From Hypanus sabinus (lineage: Eukaryota): a stretch of DNA of 64,000 nt. Position numbers and translations under genes: made by a program. The notes below the pieces were generated by a model. That model did not search any database. It was not told the origin of the DNA and saw only the letters and a program-made list of their open reading frames with translations. This document shows positions 26,868 through 62,191 of this stretch, in pieces; within the stretch, counting starts at the first letter, position 1; each line of letters starts with the position of its first letter. Where the stretch lies: positions 27,404,001 through 27,468,000 of the forward strand of contig NC_082722.1 of NCBI RefSeq assembly GCF_030144855.1, given 5' to 3'.

Positions 26868-29800
26868 ATTTTATTAGCAGCAATTTTAAAACATGGAGAA
26901 CATTTTACTAACCGACAGATTCGATATTGACCCTCAATCACCGGAAGCCAGCATCGCTTTTGAACTCTGGCGTGCTTGCTTCCAATCGTAACTGGAAGAG
27001 ATTCGTGTGACCGAGCCTGCAACGATGCACAAAATTCTCCTATCCAGGGTCAGTCCATGGGTCTACTCCCTGATCAGGTACCTACCAACCTACCAAGGTG
27101 CACTGGACGCCCTCCAAAGACAATACCTGCGGCCGGTGAACATCGTCTAGGCAAGACATCGCATAGCGACACCGGGTCAGTGGGCCGGAGAGTCAAGTGC
27201 TTAGTTTGTCCCGGCTCTACAGACACTCCTGCGAGCCTGCGACTGCAGGGGACCACGGCAGAACAGCATGCAGAGCTGCAGGTAAGAGACGCCTTCGGTA
27301 CGGGGACCAGGTCAGAGTACGTGCGCCAACAGCTGCTGGAACACGCCAATCTTACCTTACATTCGGCGATTGAACAGGCCGACATGATGGAGGCCGCTCT
27401 GCACTACGCTGACGCTCTCCAGGCGCGTGATCTTCCGCCGGCCCCATGGACGCTGCAGACCCCGCAACCCGCCGGCGAATCGACCTCGGCTGCTGCCAGT
27501 CGCAAGTCCGAGCTGTGTTACTTCTGCGGTCTCGAAAAGCACCCCCGAAAACGCTGCCCCGCCCGAGAAGCTACCTGCTCCAGTTGCGGAATGAAGGGCC
27601 GCTTCGCCAAGGTCTGTAAGTTCAAACAACGAGCGAGGTCGAGCAGCATCGCGTGCGAGGCATGGGGGTCGCCATCTTTGTCGCTGCCATCTTGCCTGCC
27701 CGCCTCGTGCGAGGCATGGGGCGGCCATCTTTGTCGGCGCCACCTCGCCCCGACCACGACCCACGGGTGCTTACCGGGCACCTAGACGGCTATGCAAATC
27801 CGGCCTCCATGACCCTCGACCAAAGCGCTCCACACCAGCTCGCAAAGTTAATGATGGACATCCTAGTAGAGGGGCAAAGGACTAGCTGCCTGTTTGAAAC
27901 GGGCAACGCTGAGATTTTTATTCACCCGGACACAGTGCAACGCTGCGGACTCGTGACACAGCCGGTAAGCCAAAAGATCACCATGGCTTCTGGATCGCAT
28001 TCCACAGACATCCGAGGGAGGTGGTTGTGTAGCAACATTTGTGGTGCAGGACCCAGAATATGGGAACTTTGCGTTATTGGTCTTGCCTCAACAGTATGCC
28101 CCTGTGCTATTGGGGCTCGACTTCCATAGCCACCTGAAAAGTGTGATAATGGAGTATGACGGGCCCCTCCCACCAATAACTGTCAGAAATCCTCAGGTTT
28201 GTGGGACTTCGTCATATACCCTGCTACTGACAACACACACACACACCAACCCGCACATCCTACCCAACATCATGCCAACGGCCGCGCTACTAACACCACT
28301 TTCAGCCTCGCCAACCTCAAGATCCCTCCCCCACCGCTGTTCGCCAACCTGACCCCCGACTGCAAACCTGTGGCAACTAAAAGCAGGAGGTTCAGCGCGG
28401 GGGACAGAGCCTTCATTAAGTCGGAGCTGCAGCAGCTGCTCAGAGACGGGATCATTGAGCCAAGCACAAGTACTTGGAGGGCCCAGGTGGTCGTTGTTCG
28501 GAGCGGGCAGAAAAAAAGGATGGTCGTGGACTATAGCCAGACCTTCAACAGGTTCACGCAGCTTGACGCGTACCCCCTACCCCGCATCGCTGATATGGTC
28601 AATCAGATAGCTCAGTACAAGATGAAATCGACCATTGACCTGAAATCCGCTTACCATCAGCTCCCCATCCGCCCGGAGGACCGCCCCTACACCGCCTTCG
28701 TGGCGGGCGGCAGGTTCTATCACTTCCTGCGCGTCCCCTTCGATGTCACGAATGGTTTCTCTGTCTTCCAGAGGGAAATGGACCGGATGGTGGACGAGTG
28801 CCAACTGAAGGCCACGTTCCCATATCGGGATAACATCAGCATGTGCGGTCACGACTGGCAGGATCACGACACCAACCTCCAACGATTTTTCCAAGCGGCC
28901 AAAGCTCTCAACCTCAGCTATAACTGGGACAAGTGTGTGTTCGGAACAACCCGACTTGCTATCCTCGGGTATGTCGTGGAGTACGGGGTCATTGGCCTTG
29001 ACCCCGACCGTATGCGCCCCCTGCTGGAACTCCCTCTTCCCGGCACCCTCAGAGACCTCAAACGGTGCCTGGGCTTCTTTTCCTATTTCGCCCAATAGGT
29101 CCCTCACTACGCAGACAAGGACCGCCCCCTGGATAAGTCCACCGCATTTCCCCTCTCAACCGAGGCCCGCGCGCCGTTCAGCCACAATAAAGGAGACATT
29201 GCCAAAGCAACGATGCATGGGGTCCACGAGACCATTCTTTTCCAAGTAGAGAGTGATGCCTCCGACTTCGCGCTGGCTGCTACCCTCAATCAGGCAGGAA
29301 GACCGTAGCGTTCTTCTCTCGTACCCTTCAGGGCCCTGAAGTTCGGCACTCAGCGCTGGAGAAAAAAGGCCAGGCCATAGTGGAAGCTATTAGGCACTGG
29401 AGGCACTATCTCGCCAGCGAAACGTTCACCTTGCTGACGGACCAGCGCTCAGTTGCGTTCATGTTCAGTAACCAACAGTGGGGCAAAATGAAAAATGATA
29501 AAATTTTGAGGTGGAGAATAGAACTCTCCACCTACAACTATTACATTCTGTCCCGGCCTGGAAGGCTCAATGAGCCCCCTGATGCCCTATGAAGGGGAGC
29601 GTGTGCCAGCGCGCAACTCGAAAGGCTGTACGCCCTCCATGCAAAACTTTGCCACCTGGGAGTCACCCGACTTTACCATTTCGTGAAAGCCCAGAACCTG
29701 CCTTACTCCCTTGAGGAAATGAGGACGATGACCAGGGACTGTCAAGTCTGCGCTGAGTGCAAACCGCACTTCTACTGTCTTGAAAAGGCACGAATTATCA

Positions 29801-30845
29801 AGGCCAGCCGCCCCTTTGAGCGACGGAGTGTCGACTTTAAGGGCCCCCTTCCCTCAACCGACCGCAATCTCTAATTTCTAAACACAATCGACGAGTACTC
29901 GCGCATCCCCTTTGCCACCCCCTGCCCCGGTAGCACTGTTACGTCCGTCATAAAAGCCCTGCGCCAGTTCTTCACTAAGTTCGGATATCACTGCTATATC
30001 CACAGTGATAGAGGGTCCTCGTTTATGAGTGACAACATGAGCCAGTACCTGCTGGCTATTGGTATTGCTATTAGTAGGACCACGATCTATAATCCCTGGG
30101 GAATGGACAGGTGGAGAGGGAGAATTCCACTGTGTGGAAGGCCACACTCTTAGCCCTTAGGTTAAAGGGATTGCCGGTCTCTCGCTGGCAGGAGGTCCTC
30201 CCCGAGGCACACCACTCCATCCACTCCCTGTTATGCACGTCCATCAATGCCACCCCACATGAGCGACTCTTTTCTTTTTCCAGGAAGTCTGCCACTGGGA
30301 CCACCCTACCTGCTTGGCTGACGTCCCCAGGGCCAGTGCTGCTCCGGACACATGCGAGGAGCAATAAATACGCCCCCATGGTCGAGTGGGTTCGCCTACT
30401 TCATGCGAACCCCCGGTATGCCTACGTGGTCTTACCTGATGGGCGGGAGGACACGGTCTCCGTCCGCGACCTGGCGCCCGCAGGAGCACCCGACTCCTAC
30501 CCCGAACACTACACGGTGAATATGAACCCCGCACCCACCGATGTATGTACCCGCGAGACATCGCCCACACCAAGCCCTACACAGACTCCTCACGGCACTC
30601 CAATACCGGCCGCCACACACACGCATGAGGGATTACTGACGCCTAACGGGCTGGCACCTCAAGTCAGGCCGGTGCCAGCACAACCACCGTCAACGGTGCA
30701 ATCGCCACCGGCACTGGTGCAATCACCACCGGTGCTACAAAGATCGCAGTGACAGACTCGAACACCTGATAGACTTAACGTGTAAATATACTTGAAATAA
30801 ACTTCGCCCTTTGGGGACTCCCTTTTAAAACAAAGGGGGGTTGAA

Positions 30846-35699: not shown

Positions 35700-36520
35700 A
35701 CGAAATAATAACATAGAACACTACATCACAGTACAGGCCCTTTCGGCCCACAATGCTGTGCCGATCCTTAAACCCTGACATGGATATAACCCTCCACCTT
35801 AAATTCCTCCATATACCTGTCTCGTGTCTCCAATATTTCACTAGTGTATCTGCCACCACCACTGACTTAGGTAGTGCATTCCACGCACCAACCACTCTCT
35901 GAGTTAAAAGCCTTCCTCTAATATTCTCTTTGAACTTTCCACCCCTTACCTTAAAGCCATGTCCTCTTGCATTGAGCAGTGGTGCCCTGGGTACGAGGCA
36001 CTGGCAGTCAACTCTATTCCTCTTAATATGTTGTGTACCTCTATCATGTCTCCTCTCATTCCATAAGCTTCTTTAACTACCCTAACTACCTGTGAGGGAA
36101 CTTGCAGAGAACTCTGGACATGTACCCCCAGATCCCGCTGCTCCTCCACACTTCCAAGTATCCTGCCATTTACTTTGTACTCTGCATCGGATTTTATCCT
36201 TCCAAAGTGTACCACCTCACACTTCTCTGTGTTGAACTCCAACTGCAACTTACCAGCCACCTTCTGCATCCTAACAACGTCTGTCTGCAATCGTAGACAA
36301 TCTTCAACACTGTCCACAACACCACCAACATTTGTGTTGTCAGCAAACTTGTCAACCCAACCTTCCACTCTGACATCCAGGTCGTTAATAAAAATCACGA
36401 AAAGTAGAGATCCCAAAACCGATCCTTGTGGGACACCACTAGTCACAGCCCTCCAATCCGAATGTACTCCATCCAATGTAATAATGCCTGCATTAGCTTG
36501 GCGATTGTTAATTTGAAGCA
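35700..36520 (-). mobile_element. CR1 LINE RT/3' fragment
   Basis: ORF 35946-36596 contains SGVPQGSVLGSLLFVIFINDL...KFADNT...KCEVVHFG. Confidence 0.85.
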
Positions 36521-38224
36521 CAGGGACACCTGAATAAAGGTAGGTTGTGAGCCCTGGATGATAGCTCATGTGGACGTTCCCCGTAATGCACCACACAGCT
36601 TTGTAGGAACGTAAGTTAATGCAAGATGAGCGAAAAGGTGTGCAGTCAACAATGGGTGCATTAGTATGAAGATGGCACTGTTACAGAAAGCTAGATGTGG
36701 GGACATGCTGTGTCCTAGCGATTAACGTGGCTTAATAATTCAGAAAATTTCGTGTCACTGTCACTGAGAATGTGCGATGCTTGGTCGACCTTCATGGCTA
36801 CTGTGCTGGGAAAGCAATCGTACTGAACAGTTTCAGAATACTGCAGTCCGAGTAGATGCAGTGGAAATGTCTCTCTTTGTGCTTCTTTGTGCACTCTTGG
36901 GCGAGAGGACATTACTGTGGGACTGTATATGCGTGCCAATGTGGATGTCCAATTCCAAGAACTGGTCTCTATCCCTGCATGACTGGTTATGATATGTGTA
37001 TGCGACCCGTTTATCTGAAATCTACGCAATCACCGATACACTCTGCCACTTAGTGAAATAAAACACGGATTTTATAATTTTCATTCATCCTTTCAAATCT
37101 CTCTATGTTTTTGTTCCTCCAGATTCTATCCCCTTTTTCAGGTCCACCCCCAGAGCTGAAAGTATACCTCGGCTGATTGGCGATGTACTCTATCTCCCAA
37201 CCCCCAATGATCCTCACTTTTCCACGACGAACAATGCTGAACTTTTGCTCTGGATTTGTGTTTCTATTCTTTTTTGTACTCCTTTTCATAACCTTGCTTT
37301 TTGTGTGTTTAACGGCTCACTCACGAGTCATATTATCTGAAAAGCTCAGAATCAGAACGTGTTTAAAATTATTCTTTTTGCTGTGCTCCATCAAGATATG
37401 GTAACGATTTTAAAACGGCATCTAAATAATTCTTCGTGCCGCATATATAGAACCTATTGTGCAATATTGTGTTTATGTAGTTGTGTTTTGCTTCGACTTG
37501 ATGGAAATTAAATCATTTGTCGACAGAGGCACATATTCTGCACGTGTTCGCGATTTTAAATCCTCAAGTGCAAACTTTTCTACCTCTGCAATGGCAAGAT
37601 GCATCTAGTTTTTGCTAAACGAGACAGCACACACAGGAAAATAACTGCACCCACAGTTAGCTGGTGACAAAATGGAAACTCCATGCGGTCAGAAGATTCA
37701 CCGCCTCAGGCGAGTAGATTGCAAGTAACCACGTTATCGCGTTTAACGCTTAAGTGAAAAGTAAGAAAGTTAATTTAAGCAAATTATGTGTAAAGCTATT
37801 TCTGAAAGTTATGTGTTTCTGTACTCACGATATGTCATTCATAAACAACGGATGTATTTCAACTATTTTATATCTGTTAAACACGCGTTTTAAATATTCG
37901 AATATTTTTGCTAAGAACATCGAATGATTGCAATTTGTAATTCTAGGCTGGATAAAATTCATAACCCCAAGATTTTCCGCTGATGTGGAAAATCCAGAAC
38001 TACAGTACACCAAAGGATGAAGTAACTCGACATTTCAGACCGAGACCCTTCTTCAGAACTCGAATAATCAATGCCAGGGGAGAAACGCTCCTTTAATCGG
38101 CCGTACAAATGTCAAAATGTCCAGTTGGAAAAAATTGTCGATTATTTTCACCTAAAGCAGTAACCCCTCAGAATGTAGGTGATATCACTTAAGGTTAAGG
38201 TTATATACTGAGGACAAATTGCTT

Positions 38225-51038: not shown

Positions 51039-51093
51039 ATGTCGGAGAAATTGACGGTTTCGTACATGGCACTTCTGGCTATTACTTGGCTAA
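51039..51093 (+). CDS. Exon 1: signal peptide MSEKLTVSYMALLAITWL
   Basis: aagATG context, hydrophobic core, phase-1 donor A|gtatgc that joins the V exon in frame. Confidence 0.75.
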
Positions 51094-54000
51094 GTATGCT
51101 GATTTATACCTGCCTCTTCGGAACGGAATATTCTATTTTAAATATTTAATCCTGGTTGCCCGCAGCATATCTGGTTACAGTGTTTCAGCTATTCGTTCGT
51201 CTTTAGCTCTTAGATGGCCAGGGACTTACGTCTTTAGTTTTTTTTTGTTAATTCATTGTGTTTCACTGTTACTAACACTTTTGCTTATTTTTCCGGCAGC
51301 TGTCAAAGTAACTGCGAGCGAAGTATCTCAGTTCCCTAGGGACCTGGACGTCCTGCGAGGTGCGAATGCTACCATGTTCTGCAAATTTCCACTTTTGCAA
51401 GATACTGTTGACGTCCGTTGGTGGAAGGACAGCGAGAAGACATTGTTAGTAAAGGACGACAGAAGACAATTTACTCTCGAAAGGGGAAGGGGTTCACTTG
51501 TACTCTGGAATGTCAAAGTCGCCGACTCCGGAATGTATTACTGTGTAGCAAGGTATCAAGAACGATATCTCGGGAAAGGAAATGGTACCAGGCTCTCTGT
51601 GTTCGGTGAGTGTGGCTGTTTGGAGATTTTCAGCTCTGTGCATTTTACATCAAACTTAGTGATGAGGACAAAATTTTTCGATTTGATAAAACAAACGGCG
51701 AGAATACATTTGTTTCCCTCTTTTAAATATACCCGAGTCCAGATGTTCTAAGTTCATAATTATAAAGATCAGAAGAATTAATCACATTTTATTTCGCTCC
51801 TTTAAAGCGCATAATAGAGTTAATTCTGTTTATCATATCGTACTTCCCCAAACTTTTCCCACTGCAGTTAGTCTAGCCCTGTTCATCAGCTATCTCCCAG
51901 TAAAACATTATGTCCAATGTTTATGATACCTTTGGACTTTGCCCATATTTTCGCGAATGTGCTTTGAATGAAACGAATTACTTTTCAAGCAAGGTTAGAA
52001 CTGTTGTGCAAGAAAGAAGTCGAGATAATATTCATACTAATGTGAATGACTTGAGGTGGATTACTCGATTCGTCATCACAGAGGACGCAAAATATGAAAA
52101 CTTATATAATCTCTATCAAAATGTCTGTATGCAGCAGCACAATGCCCCATTTCCGCATCAAAAGTAGAGAGGAACATTACCCAGATCCAAACGAATTAAT
52201 TCCAACATCACTAACAATTAGTCGCACGCACTGCAAATTGTCATTCCAACTTTTATCATGCAGACTTAGCAAAATATTTATTTCATTCACCATACAAAGG
52301 TGAATATTGTTAGAGTTGAACATCAGCTTGCAATTACCTTCATTACATTCTATCTGCTATTTTCAGCCCACCTGGTCCATAACTCGCTTCGAGCTTTGAT
52401 ACCCATGTGACACAACACTAGTCAAAGGCCTTCGTTCAATGAACAACTATCTGCTACCATACTCTGGCTTCACCCGCGAGGCCAACGCCAGAACAATTTA
52501 CTTCTTCATCCTGAATGCCAAGCCGTCTTACATGATTAGCCCACCTCCCCAATGCAAAGCATTTCCAAAGACCTTGCTAAAATCCATGTTGACCATATCC
52601 ACTGTTATCCTTCATCAAGATCAATGGTAACCCGCTCAATCAGCTCATTAAGATTGGTTAGACACAATCTAACTTGCACAAAACAGTGTTGTCAATTGCC
52701 AATAAAGCCAAGCCGATCTAAATATTTATATATCCCATTCTTTAGAACATCTATCAATAAGCTACCCACTTCTCTGTAATGGCAACTGGTCTATAATATC
52801 CCGGTTTATTCCGAGAGTATATCTCGACCAACGGCAAAACTAGAAACATAATTGCAGAGCATGATTTTGGGAAACTGAAAGATCTGAAGGTAGGTAATTC
52901 ATCTAGACCAGATGATGTACATCCCAGGATTCTGATAAAAGTTGCTGATGAGATTGTGGAGGATGGATGCGATTGTAAAGGTCGTTCGAGAAGTTGTAGA
53001 TTCTAGAATGGTTCTGATAGACTGGAAAAGTGCAAATGTCGCTCCACTCTTCAAGAAGGCAGAGAGGCAGAAAACGGAAATTGTAGGCCAGTCAGTCTAC
53101 CTCACTGGTTGACAAGATGTTGGATTCCATTATTCAGGATCAGATCTTAGGTTACTCGAAGGCACATAATAAAACAGTTCATATTCAGCATGATTTCCTG
53201 AAGGGAAGTTCTCGCCAGACAAATCTGATTGAATTATTAGAAGGGATGAAAAGCAGGATAGATACAGATACGTAGAAACGGCTGTTGTGTACTTAGATTT
53301 TCAGAAGGTCTTTGACAAGACAACATGCACAAGGCTGATTAACAATCTACGAGCCCTAAGTATTGCAGGAAAGATTCTAAGTTTTATAAAGCAGTGGCTG
53401 GTTGTTAAGAGACAAAGAATGGGAATAAAGGGGGCACTTTCTGGTTGGCTGCCCGTGACTAATGGTGTTCCACAGGGGTCTGTGCTCTGACCGGTTCTTT
53501 TAAGGCTATATGTCAATATTATGGATGATAGAATTAATGACTTCGTTACTACGTGTGCAGACAATATGAAGATAGGTGGTCAGGCAGGTAGTTTTTTTAG
53601 GAATTAGAGCGGCAACTGAAGAACTTAGACACATTAGTAGAATAGGCAAAGAAATGGCAGATGGAATACAGTGTCGAGAAGTGTGTGGTAATGCACTTTG
53701 TTAGAGGGTATGGAAGTCTTCTCTATTTTCTAACCGGATAGAAAATACAAAACCATGGATGTGCAAAGGGACTTGTGCATCCGTATGCAGTATTCCAAAC
53801 AGGTTAATTTGCAAATTGAGTCTGTGGTCAGGAAGGAAAATTCAATAACAGCATTCATTTCAAGAGAACTAGAAGAGAATAGCAAGGATGTAATGTTGAG
53901 ACTTTATAAAGCACTGGTGAGGCGTCACGACACATTGTGAGCAGTTTTAGACACCTTATCTTGGAAAGAATGTGCTGAGCCTGGAGGTGGTTCAGAGGAG

Positions 54001-57000
54001 ATTCAAAACAATGATTCCAGAATTAAATAGCTAGTTATATGAGAGCGTTTTATGTCTCTGGGCCTAAATTAACAGGAATTCAGAAAAAAATTAGATGCGA
54101 CCACATTGAAACCTTTTGAAAGGTGAAGGTTCTTGATAGTGTGGAATTGGAGAGGATGTCCCCTACGGTGGGAGAATATAAGACCAGAGGACGCAGCCTC
54201 AGAATAGAGGGGCATCCTTTTAAAAAGGAGATGAAGCAGAATTTTTTTGCCACAGTCAACTATGGAGACCAAGTCATGATGGAAATTTAAAGCAGAGTTG
54301 CTACCTTCTTGATTGGTTAGGGCATGAACAGCTACGGGGAGAAGGCAGCAGATTCGGGCTGAGAGGAAGATAATAGCTATGATGAAATAGCAGAGCAAAC
54401 TTGGTGGCCAAAATGTCTAATTCGGTTCCTATATCCAATAGTCATGTCGTGGTAAAACATTAGTTATACAGTAGTCTTCCGGCACCTCACCCACGAGTAT
54501 GGACATTCTGAATAACTCTATCGGGGCCCTTCCACTTTCTGCACTATCTTCCACCGAGGTCCCATAGGACACCTTGCCATACTCTGGGGACTTCTGTACC
54601 TCAAGGCTGTAATCTGCTTCTGGGCCATGACATTGCTTCTGGTTTGCTTTAGTAATATAGTCTCTGTGTACGTATCACGAGTAAATACAAATGGAAATGT
54701 ATCAGATTTCGCGCCCCCCCCCCACACCGCCACCAAACACACGCATCTCTTTCGGCTCCATGCATTGTTGAACCCGCTGATCTTCAGACGGATCAACCTT
54801 TTCTGTCGCTACCCCTTTATACTGAGTGCATCTGCAGAAGCACTTCGAATTTTCCCCCTTAGGATTGCCTTTCACCTAGAATTTGAGAAGTCCAGGAACA
54901 TTGATGTCGGTATAGGCGTCGGAAGTGGTGTCATCCAGCCGTGACCTCCGGATGGTTATTGTACGCAAAGCGAAATCCTGACTGCTGTGATAAGCAGATA
55001 AACAAATCTAACTGTTGAATCTCTCCTGGTGGACACCGTCCATAGCTGTAGCTGAATCTGCCCACGTTTAGAAAACCTTAAAATTGGGCTCACGTTTTAG
55101 TAAACTTTGTGCATGGTGAAATTGAAGTTGTTCAGTTCATGTTTGACTCACTGCAAGGAATCATTTCCACCAGCGATCCTTTAGCAGTGCCAAGTCACTG
55201 TCGACAGTTTTGCTGCAGGACTTCAGACTTTAGACAGAATAAAACTATAGAATCAATGCACTTAATATCAATTTGCATTTGCGTTTCTGGTTGTTTCGTG
55301 GAGAAGATGATTCGCATCAGTCAATACGGGGGAACTGTTCCAGGAATGGTTCACATTCATGGAACATCTCTATTACTGAATGCTTATGACCAAAAAGTTG
55401 AACTGCCTGAGCAGTTGAGCTGACATACTTTTCAACTCCATGTGCATTCATACTATAGAAACCTGTGATATTTCGGGTTTTGTAGCTCAGACTTGACACG
55501 AAATTAAAAATCCAAAAAAATAGCCAGGATTCCAAAGCTAACGCCCGCTGCAAACCTAACTGTGCAATAAAGCTCAAATGCCATTCAAAAGAGTATGTTT
55601 TCCGCACTTCGGACCTCCTAGCTTCGCCGTTGAGGAGTATTCTCTGAACTCTTCCTTTCATCCTTCTCCCAAACTGACTGTATTTTATTTTGCTTATTTT
55701 GTGACTGTCAGTACTGGATGGTAACTACCCGTGCTGTGTGTGAATATATATACTCTGTTTTGGAACTTGGCCCCAGAAGAACAATGTTTCGCTTAGGGGT
55801 GTGTGTGTATGGTTTAGCAACAATAAACTGAACATGAAATTGAAAGAATTTGTTAAACACTGGTTAATACTGTCGAGCAACTCATTTGATAGTTAAAGTG
55901 TCATGCCAGTTGGTGGGGAGATAAAGGAATCTACCTGCATTGAAATGAATCGAAACTACCCGATATATCTTTGTTTTTTACTGAAGCTCTTCCAACTCCA
56001 TTGGAAATTGTTCCTATTGGAGGGTTTTCGTCTCCTCGAAAACTCCAGTGTAAAACGGCTGGTTTCTATCCGGAGAAAATAGAAATCGTTTGGCAAAGAA
56101 ATAACAAGCAAATTCACACTGGAGCAGAAAATACGACAATCAAAAAAGTGGGTGGCTTGTACGAAGCTATTAGTTCATTAGAAGTCACGCAGTCTACTTG
56201 GGGAAAAGATATTTACACCTGTCTGGTGATGCATGTCTCCTTGACGGTTCCTGCCGTTTTCAGCTACATACAGGAACAAGGTAAGATGTAGTCTTGTTGT
56301 ATCTGGGCCGTAAACGTCGACACTTTAGATCTGCCTGATCGGCTGAGTTCTTCCAGGGTTTTCCGTGATACACTGAATTTCAGCATGTTCAGAATCTTTT
56401 GCGCTCTATATAAGATGGAACACTTATCAGTCATAGTGGCGTGGTCATTGTGAACTTGTTAGGAACAGTAACTGAACAGCTGCCCAAACACGGAAGAATG
56501 ACTAATTTTGAAGCTTAGTAATTGACAGTGAATTTTCAACGTGAAAGATGACAAAAAACGAACGTTTAGTTTAAATCGTGTAGGACAAATTAAGAAATTA
56601 AATTCGTGCAGTATTTGTGAGGTAGCAAACCTCTGAACATTTGCAAAAGTTGTGACAAAGCAAAGCTTAAAATCTATAGTTCATTGTGAGATAACAAAGG
56701 TCGGAATTTGTATTTCCTGTTTTATGATATATTTTCCGAAATTGTGCAGTGAGGTTTGAAAGCAGCATATAAAATATTTGACATTGTTGATTCTCCTGTG
56801 TGCATTTGTTTGTAGATGTATAAATTCTTCACAGTTTCTTGTTTCCCCCCTGTTGATTCACAAGGCTCTGATACTAAATTCATTCTGGCATGTGCAGTGG
56901 GCGGATCGGCAAATTTAGCTCTGATAATAGTTTTGGTGAAAGTCAAGTTAAAGAGATCGCACGGTAAGGACCCTGATCGCTGTGAAATTTCATCTCTATT

Positions 57001-60000
57001 CGAGCAAAATAGATATGCTAAAGGTACTTAACTTCAAAACGAAATCTCATTACAGCATAATTAGACAGGGATTGAGATGCTCGGACCGGATTACATAAAT
57101 ATTCATCAGGCACAATAAAAGCAGGATCTGTAAATGCAATAATTCTACCAGTCCATTCGCTGTATTTACACGCAGTATCTTGTTTATAAGTGCCATTATA
57201 TCCCTTCGGAATACTTCAAATGTCGTTTTAAATACACTGGTCGATCCAGGGTATCAAGGGATAGGGGGAAAAGTTGGAAATTGGAACTAGATGGGAGAAT
57301 AGTTTCGCTCATGAAGGAGTGGCGGAGCAGACTCGCTGGGCCGAATGGCCTACTTCTGCTCCTTTGTTTTGTGATCTTATGATATGTTGAAGCATAAGCA
57401 GCTTCACGTAGGTCTATGCTTACTGTGACTGTGTCAAAAAAATTGACGAAATCGTGCATGTCTCATTGATTTTAATTTCCATTTTACCGACAGTATTTAA
57501 ATGTAGTACAGCTATTCATATTCTGTTATCACTTTACAGCTTTAAAGTCGAAGACTGTTCAGCATAGTTCCACGATGTTTATGCACTGTATTAAGACAAC
57601 TGATACCCCAAAATGCTTTCTAAAAGATCCGTAAATTCAGCAGATCCTGTCAGGAGCCGGTCCGGTCCAAGGACTCCGGACTCCGGGTCCTGCAGTTGTC
57701 CCTCCAGTCACCCGTAAACTAGTTAGGACATTCCTGGCTCAAGGAGGCACACCTGTGACTCATTGAGCTGCAGGTGCTTATAGGGGGCCTTGGGACTGGG
57801 ACCAGGCGGGTGGTGGTTTTTTTCTGTTTCCTGTTCTCCGCCGGCTCCGAACACTTCTCTGCATTCTATTATCCTGCCCGGGCTCAGATCTACTCCTCAT
57901 CATGCTTCTCTGCCCCGTACCAGTACTGCCAGGTTGGTCCTCTCCCCCACCTTTCTTCCCATGCGTTGCTCCCGATTCTCCGTTCGTTTGCGTTGTTCGC
58001 GCTGTCGCGCTGTCTGCCGGCCTTTCCCGATTTTCCTGTTATCATGACTGTTGTGTTGGTCACCCTGGACCTAAGCCCGTTCCTACACCTTGCCTCCGTC
58101 GGGCAGGTCCGTCCGGTCTGCCGCTGCCCGGGCAGAGGTTCTGCCCCGTCCTCCTCATCAGCCCGAACCCTGGAATTGTGCCCCGCAACCGCCTAGGGGT
58201 CCGCGCGTGCCCAGGCCTCCGGTGTTCCCGCCTGGGAGGTGGCCCAGAGAGGGCTCTACGCCAGCCTATCTAGCCACCTAGACCTGCCTTCCTGCCTGAA
58301 CCCCGGGACCTGTCTGCCTTCCTGCCTGAACCCCGGGACCTGTCTGCCTGCCTGATCCCCGGGAAACTGCCTGAACCCCCGGACCTGTCTGCCTGCCTGC
58401 CCGAACCCTCGGACGTGCCTGCCTGCCTGAACCCCGGTGACCTGTCTGCCTGCCTGAACACCGGGAGCCCGCTCCGCTCTGCCTGCCTGAACACCGGGAG
58501 CCCGCTCCGCTCTGCCTGCCTGAACACCGGGAGCCCGCTACGCTCTGCCTGCCTGAACACCGGTAGCCCGCTCCGCTCTGCCTGCCTGACCCTCTACCGA
58601 CCTGAACCCCAGCTCTACCCTTAAATGCCATGGCATCCTCATCCTCTCCTCTCCCTAGTACTTCAGTGTCTGCGTCCTGTGTTTGGGTCCATCCGACCGC
58701 GTTCCTGACAGTTCCTCTTTCGCGGTGAATTCGATTGGTAGCAAACGAATAATGTCCATTGCTTACAAGGCAAATAATTTATTTTACTTTTCTTAAGGGA
58801 TTAACGCAAGTTCTTTGGACAGATGTCAGAATGAACAGACGGTATGTGAAGGGTCGTGTCTGCTTTCTTAGTGGCGTATACATATAGCAGAAATATTATA
58901 AATTTATTTTGTTCTAATATTTTGAACGCAATAGGAAATAATGAAACTCCCCGACAACTCATTATTTTGAAGTATATATCCAAGATGTGTTTGCATATTC
59001 CTGCTTAATCTGCTTCCTTTAGTCTTTGAGGATTCCACACCAGTTTTTAACCGGTTGCATTGAGATGAACGGTAATATAAACCAGTGGAAGTTAGGCAGT
59101 TAATCATTCACTGTGTAGCGAATAATTAAGTATAAATCTAAGCCTGAGGTGATTTAGATGTCAAATGTCGGCTTACGAGAATCACGGTATAGTGGTGAAT
59201 GGCGAAATACTGTACACGCTGAAATCATTTCGCAATATGTGTTACATTTGATTTAAACGAAGAGTCAGCAAAATTGAAAATACAATGAAATCTTGTTTTG
59301 TAACGTCATATGCAGTTTTCAACCCCGATTCCCAATAAAGATCCATACGGTATTGCTTAACCTGCAATAGAATCAAATATGTGTCCAATAAACCGTGTAG
59401 TTTCTGGCGCATAATGATACCCATATGTTAACTAAACTCCACAAGGCGCCCGCTTTTCCACGAGGCTATGCTGAATGATTATTGTCATCAATTTTGAAAG
59501 AAATGCTTCAAAACATATGAATGCATTATCATGTCCCATTTTGGATTAAATCCAGAAGTTAAAAATCTCTAGCGACATCTTGGGAAAGAGAAAACGTTGT
59601 CCTTTCAGGTTGAAAATTCCTCCCCAGAACGTAGCATAAACGTTCATTGTTTCTCTTTGCTCTCGTGTTTCCTGACCACAGTGTGTTTTATTTGTTTATT
59701 TTACTTCAGAGTTCCAGCAGTTCAATGTTATAAAATTTGTGCTACCTGGATTCTCCTGACAGCATAAATTAAAACTCTATCGGTTGTATACCTATCTGTC
59801 TAGAACTGGAAACGTCTACTTGTGTTCAATTACTCACCTTTCCAAAGTTAGCGCGTGTTTTTACTTTTAAGTAACGGTATTAGCTGCGGCAACTTTTCAT
59901 ATCACCAGAACAAGGCTGTCATATCTCACAACACACACAAAATGCTGGTGGAACACTGCAGGCCAGGCAGCATTTATAGGGAGAAGCGCTGTCGGCCTTT

Positions 60001-62191
60001 CGGGCCGAGACCCTTCGGCAGGACTCACGATGTACTCACGTCAGGACTGTGACGAATGGTCTCGGCCCGAAACGTCGACAGCGCTTCTCCCTATAGATGC
60101 TGCTTGGCCTGCTGTATTCCACCAGCATTTGGTGTGTTTTGTTTGAATTTCCAGCATCTCAAATTTCCTCGTGTTTGCTGTTATATCTCTCTGGCTTCAT
60201 GATATTACTAATCCGTTGAAACTTCTATCAGTGTTCGTATCACTTCCCGAAATGAAGGACTGGTTCTGACAGTAAACACGAGGAAATCTGCAGATGCTGG
60301 AAATTCAAACAACAACACACACAAAATGCTGGTCGAACACAGCAGGTTAGGCAGCATCTGAGAGTAATATTTAAGTTGAAGGTGGAATGTTGAAGACAAA
60401 TTATTTACCGTTGCTTTATTGTTCTAGAATGCTCTGTTATTTTTCCTGCCAAAACAAATGCTATTTTAACCATTTTCTGTAACGTGCATCTCCAGTTGTT
60501 CTACTTATTTCGATTGTAACTTGTTGATTCACTAGCAACATCAATAAGCCCAACAGCGGGCAAGATGCCCATCCCGCATTTGCTAACTCAGTTAAGCCAG
60601 GCTGGGACAGTACATCAGGTCTTGCCATTTGTACCAATGTCCTTAACCTAGATAATGCGAGTTTGAAGATCACAGATCCTAATTGAACCATGGGTACAAA
60701 ATCTGGTCCATGCCAATGATTACAATAATTTGTCGGGGTGCATAAGATAAACGCATCTGATAAAGCCCGTGCACAAAACTTGGAAGAGCGGAAGTTATAT
60801 AACCACATAACCATATAACAATTACAGCCCTTCTGGTCCGTGCCGAACACTTTCACCTAGTCCTAGTCCCAAAGTATGACAAAGTCGAAAACAAGGGTAT
60901 GACATAAGACATGAAAAAAAAGGAGATGGCCAGGCCTGAAAAACCGTTCCGATTGATAGGCTAGTTAAAAGTGTTTGTTTGGAAATCTAACCTATACGTA
61001 GCAACTTCAGGCCTGAAATGGGTTTGGTATCCCACGCCCGGTATGATACACGGACAATATCATTATACGCGGACAAAATATTATTCCAACCATTTTTAAT
61101 CATTTTCTATTATTAGATAATCCGAATCAAACTTACTTCGTCATCACTGACCTTTGTATCTGTTATCAGTATTAAGTATATTTTTCTAACAGGCTGAAGA
61201 AGCTGCGGATGAGCACAACACAGACTATGTTTCACTAAATAAGAGGGAGAGCAAAGGATTTCGCAAAGATCGACAAGAAAAGCGCATTATCTATTCTCCG
61301 GTAAAGCAGATACATAGCCATGAATAACATATGAATTTGCTTCAGAGATATAACACTGTAACAGAACCGTCCGGCCCGAACAGTTCGTGCTACCCAATTA
61401 TACCCCTTTGAACAATTAGCCGACTCACGACTACATATTTAGAATGTGGGAGAAAACCCGAACGCCCACAGAAATTCATACGGTCATGGGAAAACTTAGA
61501 AACACACCATTTAGTCGCGCACTGGAAGAAAACCTGGATCACTGCTGCTTTAATAGTGTTACGCTAGCCGAACGATACCGAGCCAGGCAAAACATAACTT
61601 TGCCATATCAAATCTGTTCAGGACTTTTAACATTCGGAATGTTTCTATGAGATCCCCCCTGTTGGTAGGTGTGACTGAGGAACCAATATCTATAGACTAA
61701 ATGGTTGTGGCAATCCGACACATATAACACAAAAATGCGCTAGTGTTTTGAGTTAGCGAAATATGTTTTACTATACCTGCTGGCTTAAGGAGTTACCTAC
61801 TCTCCCAACTCGATTTAGTTAAACTTCATTTCTATAATGAAAGAAACGCTCGTGATTCTACAGGCTGATGGAGTTGAAATACCATATAAATCCGGACAGA
61901 AAAAGTGAAAACAAATGTTGACATAGATTTTGTGTAAAACGACAGAAATCTAAAATCGATAACTTATAAGTGCATCAGTAATTTATTTTAGAATTTTTGA
62001 TTCGATTTGTACAACTCAATGGTTCCTGATTAATCACTGATTTTGAAATATTTTCACAGACTAAAAGAAATGGAGCTGACAAACTGACCTACGCTGCGCT
62101 ACAGCTTCCCGATTCCAAGAACACCTCAGCATCCAAACATCAAAACCAACACACGCTCTACGCAGATGTAAATACATCAAAGAAACTGTGA
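51039..62191 (+). CDS. Multi-exon gene: non-rearranging VJ-C1 Ig-superfamily type I membrane receptor with ITIM/ITSM tail (NKp30/SIRP-like), about 330 aa
   Basis: Six coding exons with GT-AG boundaries: 51039-51093, 51300-51605, 55987-56280, 56865-56963, 61193-61300, 62060-62191. Phases match except TM to cytoplasmic exon 1, which needs a small 3n+2 exon or the downstream AG at 61199. Confidence 0.85.
51300..51605 (+). CDS. Exon 2: Ig V domain with germline-joined J-like G strand
   Basis: Acceptor ttattttttccggcag-type tract, donor G|gtgagt, 306 nt. MFC...RWW...DSGMYYC...LGKGNGTRLSVF. Confidence 0.93.
52820..54440 (+). mobile_element. Degraded CR1 ORF2 in the V-C1 intron (preceded by minus-strand CR1 fragments at about 52360-52800)
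   Basis: YLDFQKVFDK...GVPQGSVL; LYKALVRRH. Confidence 0.8.
54480..54960 (+). mobile_element. Penelope-like RT fragment in the V-C1 intron
   Basis: Degenerate sequence, recognised by family resemblance only. Confidence 0.4.
55987..56280 (+). CDS. Exon 3: Ig C1-set domain
   Basis: Acceptor ttgttttttactgaag, donor G|gtaaga, 294 nt. KLQCKTAGFYPEKIEIVW...YTCLVMHVSL. Confidence 0.93.
56865..56963 (+). CDS. Exon 4: transmembrane GSDTKFILACAVGGSANLALIIVLVKVKLKRSH
   Basis: Pyrimidine tract plus acaag acceptor, donor G|gtaagg, 99 nt, phase 1-1. Hydrophobic run followed by basic stop-transfer residues. Confidence 0.85.
57648..58710 (+). mobile_element. Solo LTR (1063 bp) in receptor intron 4
   Basis: TGTCAGGA...TCCTGACA inverted termini. 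Flanks gatcc / gttcc (5-bp TSD with one mismatch). GC/CpG-rich, no internal coding region. Confidence 0.75.
58446..58589. repeat. 33-bp minisatellite x4.4 inside the LTR, preceded by degenerate 26-30-bp units from 58278
   Basis: Unit ctgcctgcctgaacaccgggagcccgctccgct, seen as SACLNTGSPLR repeats in ORF 58415. Confidence 0.9.
59930..60140. repeat. About 90-bp inverted repeat (hairpin) of two tail-to-tail Penelope-like terminal repeats, loop about 25 nt
   Basis: 59941-59953 pairs with 60117-60129 and 60001-60012 pairs with 60058-60069, same centre (60035), no indels. Confidence 0.9.
61193..61300 (+). CDS. Exon 5: cytoplasmic AEEAADEHNTDYVSLNKRESKGFRKDRQEKRIIYSP
   Basis: Acceptor tatttttctaacag, donor CCG|gtaaag, 108 nt, phase 0-0. 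Tyrosine motifs TDYVSL and IIYSP(V). Confidence 0.75.
62060..62191 (+). CDS. Exon 6: terminal cytoplasmic TKRNGADKLTYAALQL...HTLYADVNTSKKL-stop
   Basis: Acceptor attttcacag. Canonical ITIM LTYAAL and ITSM TLYADV. TGA at 62189-62191. Confidence 0.85.
   Translation, partial: TKRNGADKLTYAALQLPDSKNTSASKHQNQHTLYADVNTSKKL

What the first reader, a model, noticed from the sequence alone, without database searches (positions are those of the whole stretch)
51039..62191. Non-rearranging VJ-C1 receptor: NKp30-like V, antigen-receptor-type C1 and a four-tyrosine inhibitory tail
Seen: one exon encodes V and a J-like strand together (YYC...LGKGNGTRLSV), followed by a true C1-set exon, a TM exon and two cytoplasmic exons with TDYVSL, IIYSP(V), LTYAAL and TLYADV. 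The ORF track shows only the V, C1 and TM pieces and misses the leader and tail. Known: human NKp30 ends its V in GTGNGTRLVV but is V-only and activating; SIRP-alpha has V-C1-C1 and four tail tyrosines; C1 domains are largely restricted to Ig/TCR/MHC/SIRP/tapasin-type proteins; an unsplit VJ-C1 gene is the proposed pre-RAG antigen-receptor layout. Inference: this is a chondrichthyan inhibitory receptor combining those features, possibly an undescribed family.
Basis: partly seen in the sequence, partly recalled or inferred. Interest (0 to 1): 0.88.

Follow-up and report, generated by a model that had tools for sequence, protein, structure and literature searches.

The report
Stingray VJ-C1 inhibitory receptor gene
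This is a real, intact Atlantic stingray gene for a cell-surface immune receptor with one antibody-like variable domain, one constant domain and an inhibitory tail; it belongs to a large gene family found so far only in sharks, rays and chimaeras, predicted in public databases but apparently unstudied.

Summary
The window is Hypanus sabinus. At 51039-62191 (+) lies one intact gene of seven exons, not six. All splice sites are GT-AG, and the ORF is 345 or 355 aa: split leader, VJ exon, C1-set exon, TM exon and three tail exons.

NCBI's model of this gene stops after the C1 exon and is called "NCR3LG1-like". The tail has one canonical ITIM (LTYAAL) and one ITSM (TLYADV) 23 residues apart. TDYVSL is motif-like. 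IIYSP becomes IIYSPT after splicing and is not an ITIM.

The gene belongs to a multigene family of over 100 clusters. All 30 V-C1 members whose names I looked up, and every family-level hit of the named profile search, are chondrichthyan. The family has inhibitory members and activating-type members (Arg in the TM, short tail).

In trees the family is monophyletic and lies outside the SIRP, B7H6-type, UrIg2-like, IgH and TCR-gamma groups sampled. Its deeper affinity is unresolved. A specific NKp30 relationship could not be tested.

It most likely acts as a SIRP-alpha/NITR-like inhibitory receptor that recruits SHP-1/2. The scan had already found this family on other DNA of the same chromosome. 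I found no paper describing it, but key papers were not held.

The parts
51039..51093 (+). Exon 1: start codon and 18 leader residues plus 1 base (phase-1 donor CTAA|GTATGC); a split leader
   Evidence: Sequence; matches the N-terminus of NCBI model P0001 and its paralogues
51300..51605 (+). Exon 2: end of the leader plus the V domain with a germline-joined J-like G strand (phase 1-1)
   Evidence: Pfam V-set 3.3e-11; Cys23, Trp and YYC present; GxG is at least 90% conserved across 59 family V domains; AF2 pLDDT above 90
51572..51601 (+). J-like strand GKGNGTRLSV inside the V exon, with no RSS or intron between V and J
   Evidence: the F-G segment best matches rearranged Ig/TCR junctions in the PDB
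55987..56280 (+). Exon 3: C1-set Ig domain (FYPEKIEIVW ... YTCLVMHVSL), phase 1-1
   Evidence: Pfam C1-set 1.7e-15; PDB hits to Ig constant domains and UrIg2
56281..56291 (+). Read-through of the exon-3 donor (GKM, then stop) that ends NCBI's 221-aa model of this gene
   Evidence: P0001 sequence; gene span of 5253 bp
56835..56963 (+). Exon 4: stalk, transmembrane helix and KRSH; a second in-frame acceptor at 56865 gives a product 10 residues shorter
   Evidence: No charged residue in the TM core
58798..58841 (+).
   Evidence: tblastn with P0003, P0005, P0007, P0009 and P0010; splice sites taag|GG and ACG|gtatgt; ORF check
61193..61300 (+). Exon 6: cytoplasmic, with TDYVSL (61220-61237) and IIYSP (61286-61300)
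62060..62191 (+). Exon 7: ITIM LTYAAL (62084-62101), ITSM TLYADV (62153-62170), stop TGA at 62189-62191
   Evidence: 81-85% identical to the Mobula tails

Best explanation
An intact seven-exon gene of the Atlantic stingray encodes a type I membrane glycoprotein. Its parts are a split leader, one V domain with a germline-joined J-like strand, one C1-set domain, a short stalk, an uncharged transmembrane helix and a cytoplasmic tail of about 100 residues.

It is one inhibitory member of a large multigene family so far found only in chondrichthyans. The family's automatic names are inconsistent. It also contains activating-type members with an arginine in the membrane helix and a short tail.

Inferred mechanism: the V domain binds an unknown ligand. 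Src-family kinases then phosphorylate the ITIM (LTYAAL) and the ITSM (TLYADV), whose tyrosines are 23 residues apart. The tandem SH2 domains of SHP-1/SHP-2 dock there and damp activating signals in the same cell. This is how SIRP-alpha, PD-1, KIR and teleost NITRs work.

Shown here: the gene structure, domain types, motifs, family membership and phylogenetic separateness. Inferred only: expression, ligand, cell type and phosphatase recruitment.
For: - Gene model: seven exons with GT-AG sites and matching phases give one ORF of 345/355 aa.
- The same exon order appears in NCBI models of the paralogues P0184 and P0198 (same species) and of P0010 and P0012 (Mobula).
- Domains: Pfam V-set 3e-11 and C1-set 1.7e-15. 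The AF2 model of the V-C1 part has pLDDT 88.6.
- Family: the exhaustive profile search gave 104 proteins at E<=1e-30. All 30 V-C1 members looked up by name are rays, skates, sharks or chimaera, as are the family-level hits of the named profile search.
- Tails versus TM: about 25 representatives carry LTYAAL-type ITIMs, mostly with a TEYAxI-type ITSM. About 15 have Arg in the TM and tails of 5-48 residues. P0004 and P0008 are such forms and are 73-76% identical to this gene's ectodomain.
- Trees: the family is monophyletic (94; 99*; 89/98) and separate from SIRP, B7H6-type, UrIg2-like, IgH and TCR-gamma.
Against: - No transcript evidence could be consulted.
- NCBI's own model of this gene ends by read-through after the C1 exon. 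The main product could therefore be a soluble V-C1 protein, or the tail exons could be little used.
- The first tail tyrosine is His in two Mobula members. The last motif reads ALYADV in several Mobula members, which is not a canonical ITSM.
- The best structural match is B7-H6, a ligand.
- No activating partner was seen among the Hypanus paralogues retrieved.
Confidence: 0.72

Rival explanations
1. It is the stingray version of SIRP-alpha: a true SIRP-family member that has lost one C1 domain.
For: - Many family members are auto-named SIRP-alpha-like or SIRP-beta-1-like.
- The best named non-chondrichthyan hits of the family profile are SIRP-beta-1-like proteins of lizard, sturgeon and bichir, at E 2e-25 to 2e-17.
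- Shark members carry LTYAxL plus TEYAxI, as SIRP tails do.
- The AU test does not reject family+SIRP (p 0.10).
Against: - There is only one C1 exon between V and TM.
- SIRP V domains score 21-37 bits against the family V profile, about the same as a bird TCR-gamma V at 27 bits. SIRP C1 domains score 24-36 bits, below B7H6-type and UrIg2-like C domains.
- SIRPs form their own clade outside the family in the V and concatenated trees.
Confidence: 0.13
2. It is a B7-family (B7H6-like) ligand rather than a receptor.
For: - NCBI calls this gene 'NCR3 ligand 1-like'.
- The best non-redundant structural match is the B7-H6 ectodomain: Z 16.5, rmsd 2.9 over 188 residues, 24% identity.
- PD-L1, B7-H6 and CD276 head the Swiss-Prot fold hits.
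- B7H6-type ectodomain C1 domains score up to 47 bits against the family C1 profile.
- The AU test does not reject family+B7H6-type (p 0.32).
Against: - The GxG J-like strand is conserved in at least 90% of family V domains.
- The family pairs ITIM/ITSM tails with activating-type members carrying a TM arginine. That is a receptor design.
- The Z margin over many other V-C proteins is small (16.5 against 15-15.8).
- B7H6-type V domains score only 12-18 bits.
- An earlier scan note places B7H6-family genes with Ig-domain tails on other chromosomes. I did not check this.
Confidence: 0.08
3. It is a member of the shark NCR3 (NKp30) family that has kept an ancestral C1 domain.
For: - The G strand GNGTRL resembles that of human NKp30 (from memory, not tested).
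- The V domain is short and lacks a clear C'' strand, as I recall for NKp30.
- A shark NCR3 multigene family is published (Kinlein 2021, cited in PMC12227049), but I could not read it.
Against: - This gene has a C1 domain, no TM arginine and a long tail.
- No NKp30 appeared among PDB or Swiss-Prot matches.
- An earlier scan note reports an NKp30-like VJ gene next to DDR1 on a different chromosome of this genome. I did not check this.
- PMC12227049 calls NCR3 MHC-linked.
Confidence: 0.07
4. The functional product is the short secreted V-C1 protein of the NCBI model, or the gene is decaying, and the downstream exons are relics.
For: The NCBI model P0001 ends with GKM and a stop by read-through of the exon-3 donor. 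An AATAAA/ATTAAA-type hexamer lies at 56597 in intron 3.
Against: - The donor CAAG|gtaaga is strong.
- All four downstream exons are open, in phase and flanked by canonical sites.
- They are 57-85% identical to the tails of Mobula relatives and of Hemitrygon P0011.
Confidence: 0.1

Closest known systems
SIRP-alpha / SIRP-beta (signal-regulatory proteins)
   Same: V domain with a J-like G strand followed by C1-set domain(s). Paired inhibitory (ITIM) and activating (charged TM) members. LTYAxL-type motifs about 23-26 residues apart. Best named non-chondrichthyan sequence hits.
   Different: This gene has one C1 domain, not two. Domain scores are low, at 21-37 bits. The family forms its own clade outside the sampled SIRPs. 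Binding to CD47 is unknown.
B7-H6 (NCR3LG1) and other B7-family ectodomains
   Same: Two-domain V-C ectodomain. Best structural superposition (Z 16.5). The C domain shares the FYPxxIxIxW ... YxCxVxHxSL pattern. This is the source of NCBI's name for the gene.
   Different: The family has a conserved GxG J-like strand, ITIM/ITSM tails and activating-type partners. B7H6-type V domains score only 12-18 bits.
UrIg / UrIg2 (non-rearranging VJ-C1 genes of elasmobranchs; PMC12227049)
   Same: Split leader, V and J in a single exon, C1-type constant domain, no rearrangement, elasmobranch.
   Different: UrIg2 has many C1-type domains (nine in nurse shark). Its tail is not reported to carry ITIM/ITSM motifs. 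It is linked to the Ig/TCR complex. A UrIg2-like V domain scores only 14 bits against the family V profile.
NKp30 (NCR3)
   Same: Joined-VJ, short V domain with a GNGTRL-type G strand (recalled, not tested).
   Different: NKp30 is V-only, has a TM arginine and is activating. This gene has a C1 domain, an uncharged TM helix and an ITIM/ITSM tail.
Teleost NITRs and chicken-type PRARPs (other germline VJ receptors)
   Same: Germline-joined VJ domain plus a second Ig domain, with ITIM-bearing and activating forms. NITRs are multigene and lineage-restricted.
   Different: The second NITR domain is I-type, not C1. PRARPs are reported from several non-mammalian classes (recalled from Fu 2019, not held). 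No bony-fish or bird protein scored at family level.

Membership tests
Pfam V-set / C1-set immunoglobulin domains | Score above Pfam's gathering threshold for each domain | tested here: met
   V-set 43.8 bits (cut-off 26); C1-set 57.6 bits (cut-off 21)
Germline-joined VJ domain (non-rearranging) | YxC ... GxGTxLxV in one exon, with no intron or RSS between V and J | tested here: met
   YYC at 51536-51544 and GKGNGTRLSV at 51572-51601 both lie in exon 51300-51605. GxG is at least 90% conserved in the family
SIRP family | Ectodomain of V followed by two C1-set domains | tested here: not met
   There is a single C1 exon between the V and TM exons. tblastn and ORF scans find no second one
SIRP family | Falls inside the SIRP clade in V and C1 trees | tested here: not met
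   The family is monophyletic and the SIRPs form a separate clade in the V and concatenated trees. In the C1 tree the SIRP domains are not monophyletic, but the family is (99*). A sister relation is not rejected (AU p 0.10). Only four to five SIRP-like proteins, all from bony vertebrates, were available
SIRP family | Binds CD47 | not testable with these tools
   Needs a binding assay
NCR3 / NKp30 | Single V domain, no C domain; arginine in the TM helix; short tail | tested here: not met
   A C1 exon is present, the TM core is uncharged and the tail is about 100 residues
NCR3 / NKp30 | V domain groups with NKp30 in a tree; MHC linkage | not tested
   No NKp30 or shark NCR3 sequence could be obtained, and Kinlein 2021 is not held. 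Chromosomal neighbours were not retrievable
B7 family (B7H6-type) | Groups with B7H6-type V and C domains | tested here: inconclusive
   The V tree gives weak sister support (86). The concatenated tree puts B7H6-type with SIRP instead (87/90). The AU test does not reject family+B7H6-type (p 0.32)
UrIg / UrIg2 | VJ exon followed by three or more C1-type exons; clusters with UrIg2 | tested here: not met
   There is one C1 exon. The UrIg2-like V scores 14 bits. UrIg2-like C domains group with IgH, not with the family
ITIM/ITSM inhibitory receptors (functional class) | [SIVL]xYxx[ILV] plus TxYxx[VI] in the tail, with tyrosines 20-30 residues apart | tested here: met
   LTYAAL (Y313) and TLYADV (Y336) in the 345-aa form. 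LTYAxL is conserved in rays and sharks
ITIM/ITSM inhibitory receptors (functional class) | Phosphotyrosine-dependent recruitment of SHP-1/SHP-2 | not testable with these tools
   Needs biochemistry
Paired activating/inhibitory receptor family | Near-identical ectodomains joined either to an ITIM tail or to a charged TM helix with a short tail | tested here: met
   Mobula P0004 and P0008 (Arg in the TM, 73-76% identical to this gene's ectodomain) contrast with P0010 and P0012 (ITIM tails). About 15 Arg-TM forms occur across the family. No such partner was seen in Hypanus itself

The most novel reading that the evidence does not exclude
This chondrichthyan VJ-C1 family is an independent, ancient lineage of germline antigen-receptor-like chains. 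On this reading it is neither SIRP, B7H6, NCR3 nor UrIg, and it serves as the long-sought polygenic, paired activating/inhibitory NK- or myeloid-cell receptor system of cartilaginous fish. That would make it the functional counterpart of KIR, LILR and Ly49 in mammals and of NITRs in teleosts. The concatenated V+C1 tree places it weakly on the antigen-receptor side (87/90). That placement would also make it a further surviving relative of the pre-RAG receptor.
Probability: 0.25. Interest if true: 0.75.

Novelty: new variant of a known kind. Interest (0 to 1): 0.55.

Why it matters
To my knowledge, cartilaginous fish have Ig, TCR and MHC but no described counterpart of the large paired NK and myeloid receptor families of mammals (KIR, LILR, Ly49, SIRP) or teleosts (NITR). 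A big, lineage-restricted family of germline VJ-C1 receptors with ITIM/ITSM and charged-TM members is an obvious candidate for that role. It also adds a V-J-C1 layout beside UrIg and UrIg2 to the debate on what the RAG transposon invaded.

On the practical side, public annotation of this gene is truncated. The family's automatic names (B7-H6 ligand, PD-L1, SIRP, tapasin-related, Ig lambda, TCR beta, MHC class II) are mutually contradictory and would mislead comparative studies.

Tried and rejected
- **Frame problem.** I first tried to fix the TM-to-tail frame with an alternative acceptor at 61199/61200, or with a longer TM exon ending at about 57026. I dropped both once tblastn found the 44-nt exon 5.
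- **First AF2 run.** The 11-sequence full-length alignment gave pLDDT 41 and was unusable. It was replaced by a 67-sequence alignment.
- **PDB sequence searches.** Single domains and domain profiles were swamped by multi-Ig proteins and antibodies, so they could not rank SIRP, NKp30 or B7-H6.
- **Foldseek against the PDB.** It returned only antibody light chains with poor TM-scores, because of the hinge angle.
- **The look-up of encoding contigs.** It confirmed the assembly (GCA_030144855.1) but gave no DNA, coordinates or neighbours, so synteny and MHC linkage were not tested.
- **Papers.** Kinlein 2021 (shark NCR3), Flajnik 2023 (UrIg) and Flajnik 2012 (B7H6/NKp30) are not held. Fu 2019 (PRARP) did not surface in searches. 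Four literature searches found no paper on this family.
- **Rest of the window.** A scan of 1-51000 found only reverse-transcriptase fragments and no second family member.
Full report
**What is there**

The window has no N runs. NCBI protein P0001 (221 aa, "natural cytotoxicity triggering receptor 3 ligand 1-like", Hypanus sabinus) is residue-for-residue the product of this window's leader, V and C1 exons plus three read-through codons. It is encoded on an 85.9-Mb chromosome of assembly GCA_030144855.1, over a span of 5253 bp. That span equals 51039-56291 here. The window is therefore Atlantic stingray DNA.

**Gene model**

Reading the sequence and splicing it in a script gives seven exons on the + strand:

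| Exon | Coordinates | Content |
|---|---|---|
| E1 | 51039-51093 | Start codon and 18 leader residues, phase-1 donor |
| E2 | 51300-51605 | End of leader, V domain with joined J-like strand |
| E3 | 55987-56280 | C1-set domain |
| E4 | 56835 or 56865 to 56963 | Stalk and transmembrane helix |
| E5 | 58798-58841 | Short cytoplasmic exon |
| E6 | 61193-61300 | Cytoplasmic, TDYVSL and IIYSP |
| E7 | 62060-62191 | Cytoplasmic, LTYAAL and TLYADV, stop |

- All introns are GT-AG. E1 to E4 follow the phase-1 rule of Ig-superfamily genes.
- The ORF is 345 or 355 aa with one terminal stop.
Without it, the phase-1 end of the TM exon cannot join the phase-0 start of E6.
- E5 was found by tblastn with Mobula and stingray relatives, which carry GINTSSLDRCQ(N/S)EE at that position. 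It has a good acceptor and donor.
- NCBI models of the paralogues P0184 and P0198 (same species) and of P0010 and P0012 (Mobula) show the same order: TM, short exon, AEQ... exon, final exon.
- The two E4 acceptors are both in frame and differ by ten residues (VSCFPPVDSQ). I could not decide between them.

**Domains**

- *V exon.* It scores as Pfam V-set (E 3.3e-11) and also as I-set. It is short, about 98 residues. In the AF2 model (pLDDT 88.6) it shows no clear C'' strand.
- *J-like strand.* The exon holds Cys, Trp, DSGMYYC and the strand GKGNGTRLSV with no interruption. In an alignment of 59 family V domains, both glycines of the GxG motif are at least 90% conserved.
- *F-G segment.* On its own it matches FR3-CDR3-FR4 of rearranged antibodies and TCRs best in the PDB, at E 7e-5 to 2e-2.
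- *Leader.* It is split, with its last residues on the V exon. PMC12227049 describes a split leader as canonical for antigen-receptor genes and for UrIg2.
- *C1 exon.* It is a true C1-set domain (E 1.7e-15), with FYPEKIEIVW and YTCLVMHVSL. Its best solved relatives by sequence are Ig heavy-chain constant domains and UrIg2.
- *Whole ectodomain.* It aligns as one stretch from the second half of V through J into CH1 of antibody heavy chains (E 3e-19).

**Tail**

In the 345-aa numbering the tyrosines are:

| Tyrosine | Motif | Status |
|---|---|---|
| Y278 | TDYVSL | Motif-like only |
| Y300 | IIYSPT | Not an ITIM |
| Y313 | LTYAAL | Canonical ITIM |
| Y336 | TLYADV | Canonical ITSM |

- The ITIM-ITSM spacing of 23 residues is in the range I recall for tandem SH2 binding by SHP-1/2 (PD-1, SIRP-alpha, PECAM-1). 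This rests on general knowledge and was not tested.
- LTYAxL is conserved from rays to horn shark and sevengill shark.
- Y278 is His in two Mobula members, and the last motif is ALYADV in several.
- "Four-tyrosine inhibitory tail" therefore overstates the case. One ITIM plus one ITSM is the defensible core.

**The family**

- The word-indexed search found ten close ray relatives.
- An exhaustive HMMER search with the family profile found 2790 proteins at E<=1e-3 and 104 at E<=1e-30.
- The short hits with a single matched stretch share the V-C1-TM layout, a GTGSxLxV strand and YTCLVSH.
- All 30 such V-C1 members that I looked up by name come from Chondrichthyes, and so do all family-level hits of the named profile search. 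Genera seen: Mobula, Hypanus, Hemitrygon, Pristis, Amblyraja, Scyliorhinus, Heterodontus, Chiloscyllium, Hemiscyllium, Heptranchias, Carcharodon, Cetorhinus, Mustelus and Callorhinchus.
- Their automatic names disagree: SIRP-alpha-like, SIRP-beta-like, NCR3LG1-like, PD-L1-like, tapasin-related-like, Ig lambda-like, TCR beta-like and MHC class II-like.
- Within a species, the members looked up sit on one chromosome. Six Hypanus models lie on the 85.9-Mb record.
- About 25 representatives have long tails with an ITIM, mostly also with an ITSM. About 15 have an arginine in the outer part of the TM helix and tails of 5-48 residues. Two of the latter (Mobula P0004 and P0008) are 73-76% identical to this gene's ectodomain. 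This is the signature of a paired activating/inhibitory receptor family.
- This gene sits in a ray-specific clade. The partial model P0011 of Hemitrygon akajei looks like its orthologue.

**Relation to known families**

- *Named hits outside Chondrichthyes.* The best are SIRP-beta-1-like proteins of lizard, sturgeon and bichir (E 2e-25 to 2e-17). Chondrichthyan members score E 1e-39 or better.
- *Per-domain scores against the family profiles:*

| Group | V domain (bits) | C1 domain (bits) |
|---|---|---|
| Bichir SIRP-like | 37 | 24 |
| Other SIRP-like | 21-27 | 32-36 |
| Bird TCR-gamma | 27 | 33 |
| B7H6-type ectodomain | 12-18 | 28-47 |
| UrIg2-like | 14 | 37-47 |

- *B7H6-type label.* I checked it for one toad protein, whose ectodomain hits B7-H3, SIRP-alpha and B7-H6 across both domains.
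- *UrIg2-like label.* It rests on architecture (VJ plus seven C1 domains plus TM), and for P0023 on an accession adjacent to the published white-shark UrIg2 (PMC12227049).
- *Structure.* The best non-redundant match is the B7-H6 ectodomain (Z 16.5). PD-L2, B7-H3, butyrophilins, Neph/Rst, SIRP-gamma (13.9) and tapasin (13.7) follow closely. Swiss-Prot fold hits tell the same story at 18-25% identity.
- *Trees.* The family is monophyletic in the V tree (SH-aLRT 94), the C1 tree (99) and a concatenated V+C1 careful tree (89/98). That last tree groups SIRP with B7H6-type. It puts the family on the side of TCR-gamma, IgH and UrIg2-like (87/90, not decisive, with long branches).
- *AU tests.* They reject neither family+SIRP (p 0.10) nor family+B7H6-type (p 0.32).
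- *Conclusion.* The family is distinct from every group I could sample, and its deeper affinity is open. NKp30 and PRARP could not be sampled.

**Literature**

- UrIg and UrIg2 are published non-rearranging VJ-C1 genes of elasmobranchs. They are argued to be the best candidates for the gene invaded by the RAG transposon (PMC12227049).
- NKp30 and PRARP are cited as other unsplit VJ genes (PMC10751288). A wider list adds CD79, NITR, SIRP and CD8 (PMC11599192).
- The layout is therefore not new in kind.
- I found no paper describing this V-C1-ITIM family. However, the shark NCR3 paper (Kinlein 2021), the PRARP paper and the first UrIg paper are not in the held library.

**Earlier notes of this scan (unchecked leads)**

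- The same kind of gene was noted 0.52, 0.68 (a tandem cluster), 0.97 and 7.0-7.5 Mb upstream on the same chromosome. One follow-up reached the same "SIRP-like, chondrichthyan-only family" reading.
- An NKp30-like gene next to DDR1, the MHC class I cluster, tapasin and B7H6-family genes were all noted on other chromosomes. If correct, this argues against NCR3 or B7H6 identity and against MHC linkage.

**Verdict**

This is a real, intact gene. It is best described as an inhibitory member of a chondrichthyan-restricted paired VJ-C1 receptor family that works like SIRP-alpha or NITR. It is auto-annotated in truncated form and apparently uncharacterised.

Noticed in passing
window 56835 vs 56865: The TM exon has two in-frame acceptors. 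The upstream one adds VSCFPPVDSQ, which puts a cysteine in the stalk and could allow disulfide-linked dimers. A branch-point-like TTCAC followed by a long pyrimidine tract favours the downstream one.
   Followed up: partly
window 56964-57031: Read-through of the TM-exon donor gives GKDPDRCEISS..., which resembles exon 5 (GINASSLDRCQNEQ). This may be the trace of an old duplication, or chance.
   Followed up: no
window 52900-53950 (intron 2): Broken reverse-transcriptase ORFs of a LINE-like element lie inside the 4.4-kb V-C1 intron (RVT_1 E 2.8e-5 for 53287-53487).
   Followed up: partly
window 58281-58589 (intron 4): A GC-rich tandem array with a 30-33-bp unit and about 7 copies (CTGCCTGAACCCCCGGACCTGTCTGCCTGC) sits just upstream of exon 5. 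The whole intron is 52% GC, against about 40% elsewhere.
   Followed up: partly
window 26976-30752 and 35946-36596: Retroelement remains: RVT_1 at 28199-29095 (+, E 4e-17) and at 35946-36593 (-, E 1e-8). No other Ig-domain gene was found in 1-51000.
   Followed up: partly
Proteins P0018, P0030, P0050, P0113, P0172, P0196 (sharks): A conserved subfamily has a TM helix that starts with Arg and ends in (I/V/F/M)DH, so it carries both a basic and an acidic residue, followed by a very short tail. P0030-type genes are 48-64% identical from bamboo shark to rays.
   Followed up: partly
Protein P0026 (Chelonia mydas, 'NCAM2 isoform X3'): This turtle protein has six tandem VJ-type domains, each ending in GxGTxVTI, plus a TM helix. 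Each domain scores 40-53 bits against the family V profile, higher than any SIRP V domain.
   Followed up: no
Protein P0175 (Heterodontus francisci): This family member has four copies of LTYAAL in a 193-residue tail, which looks like an internally repeated ITIM module.
   Followed up: no
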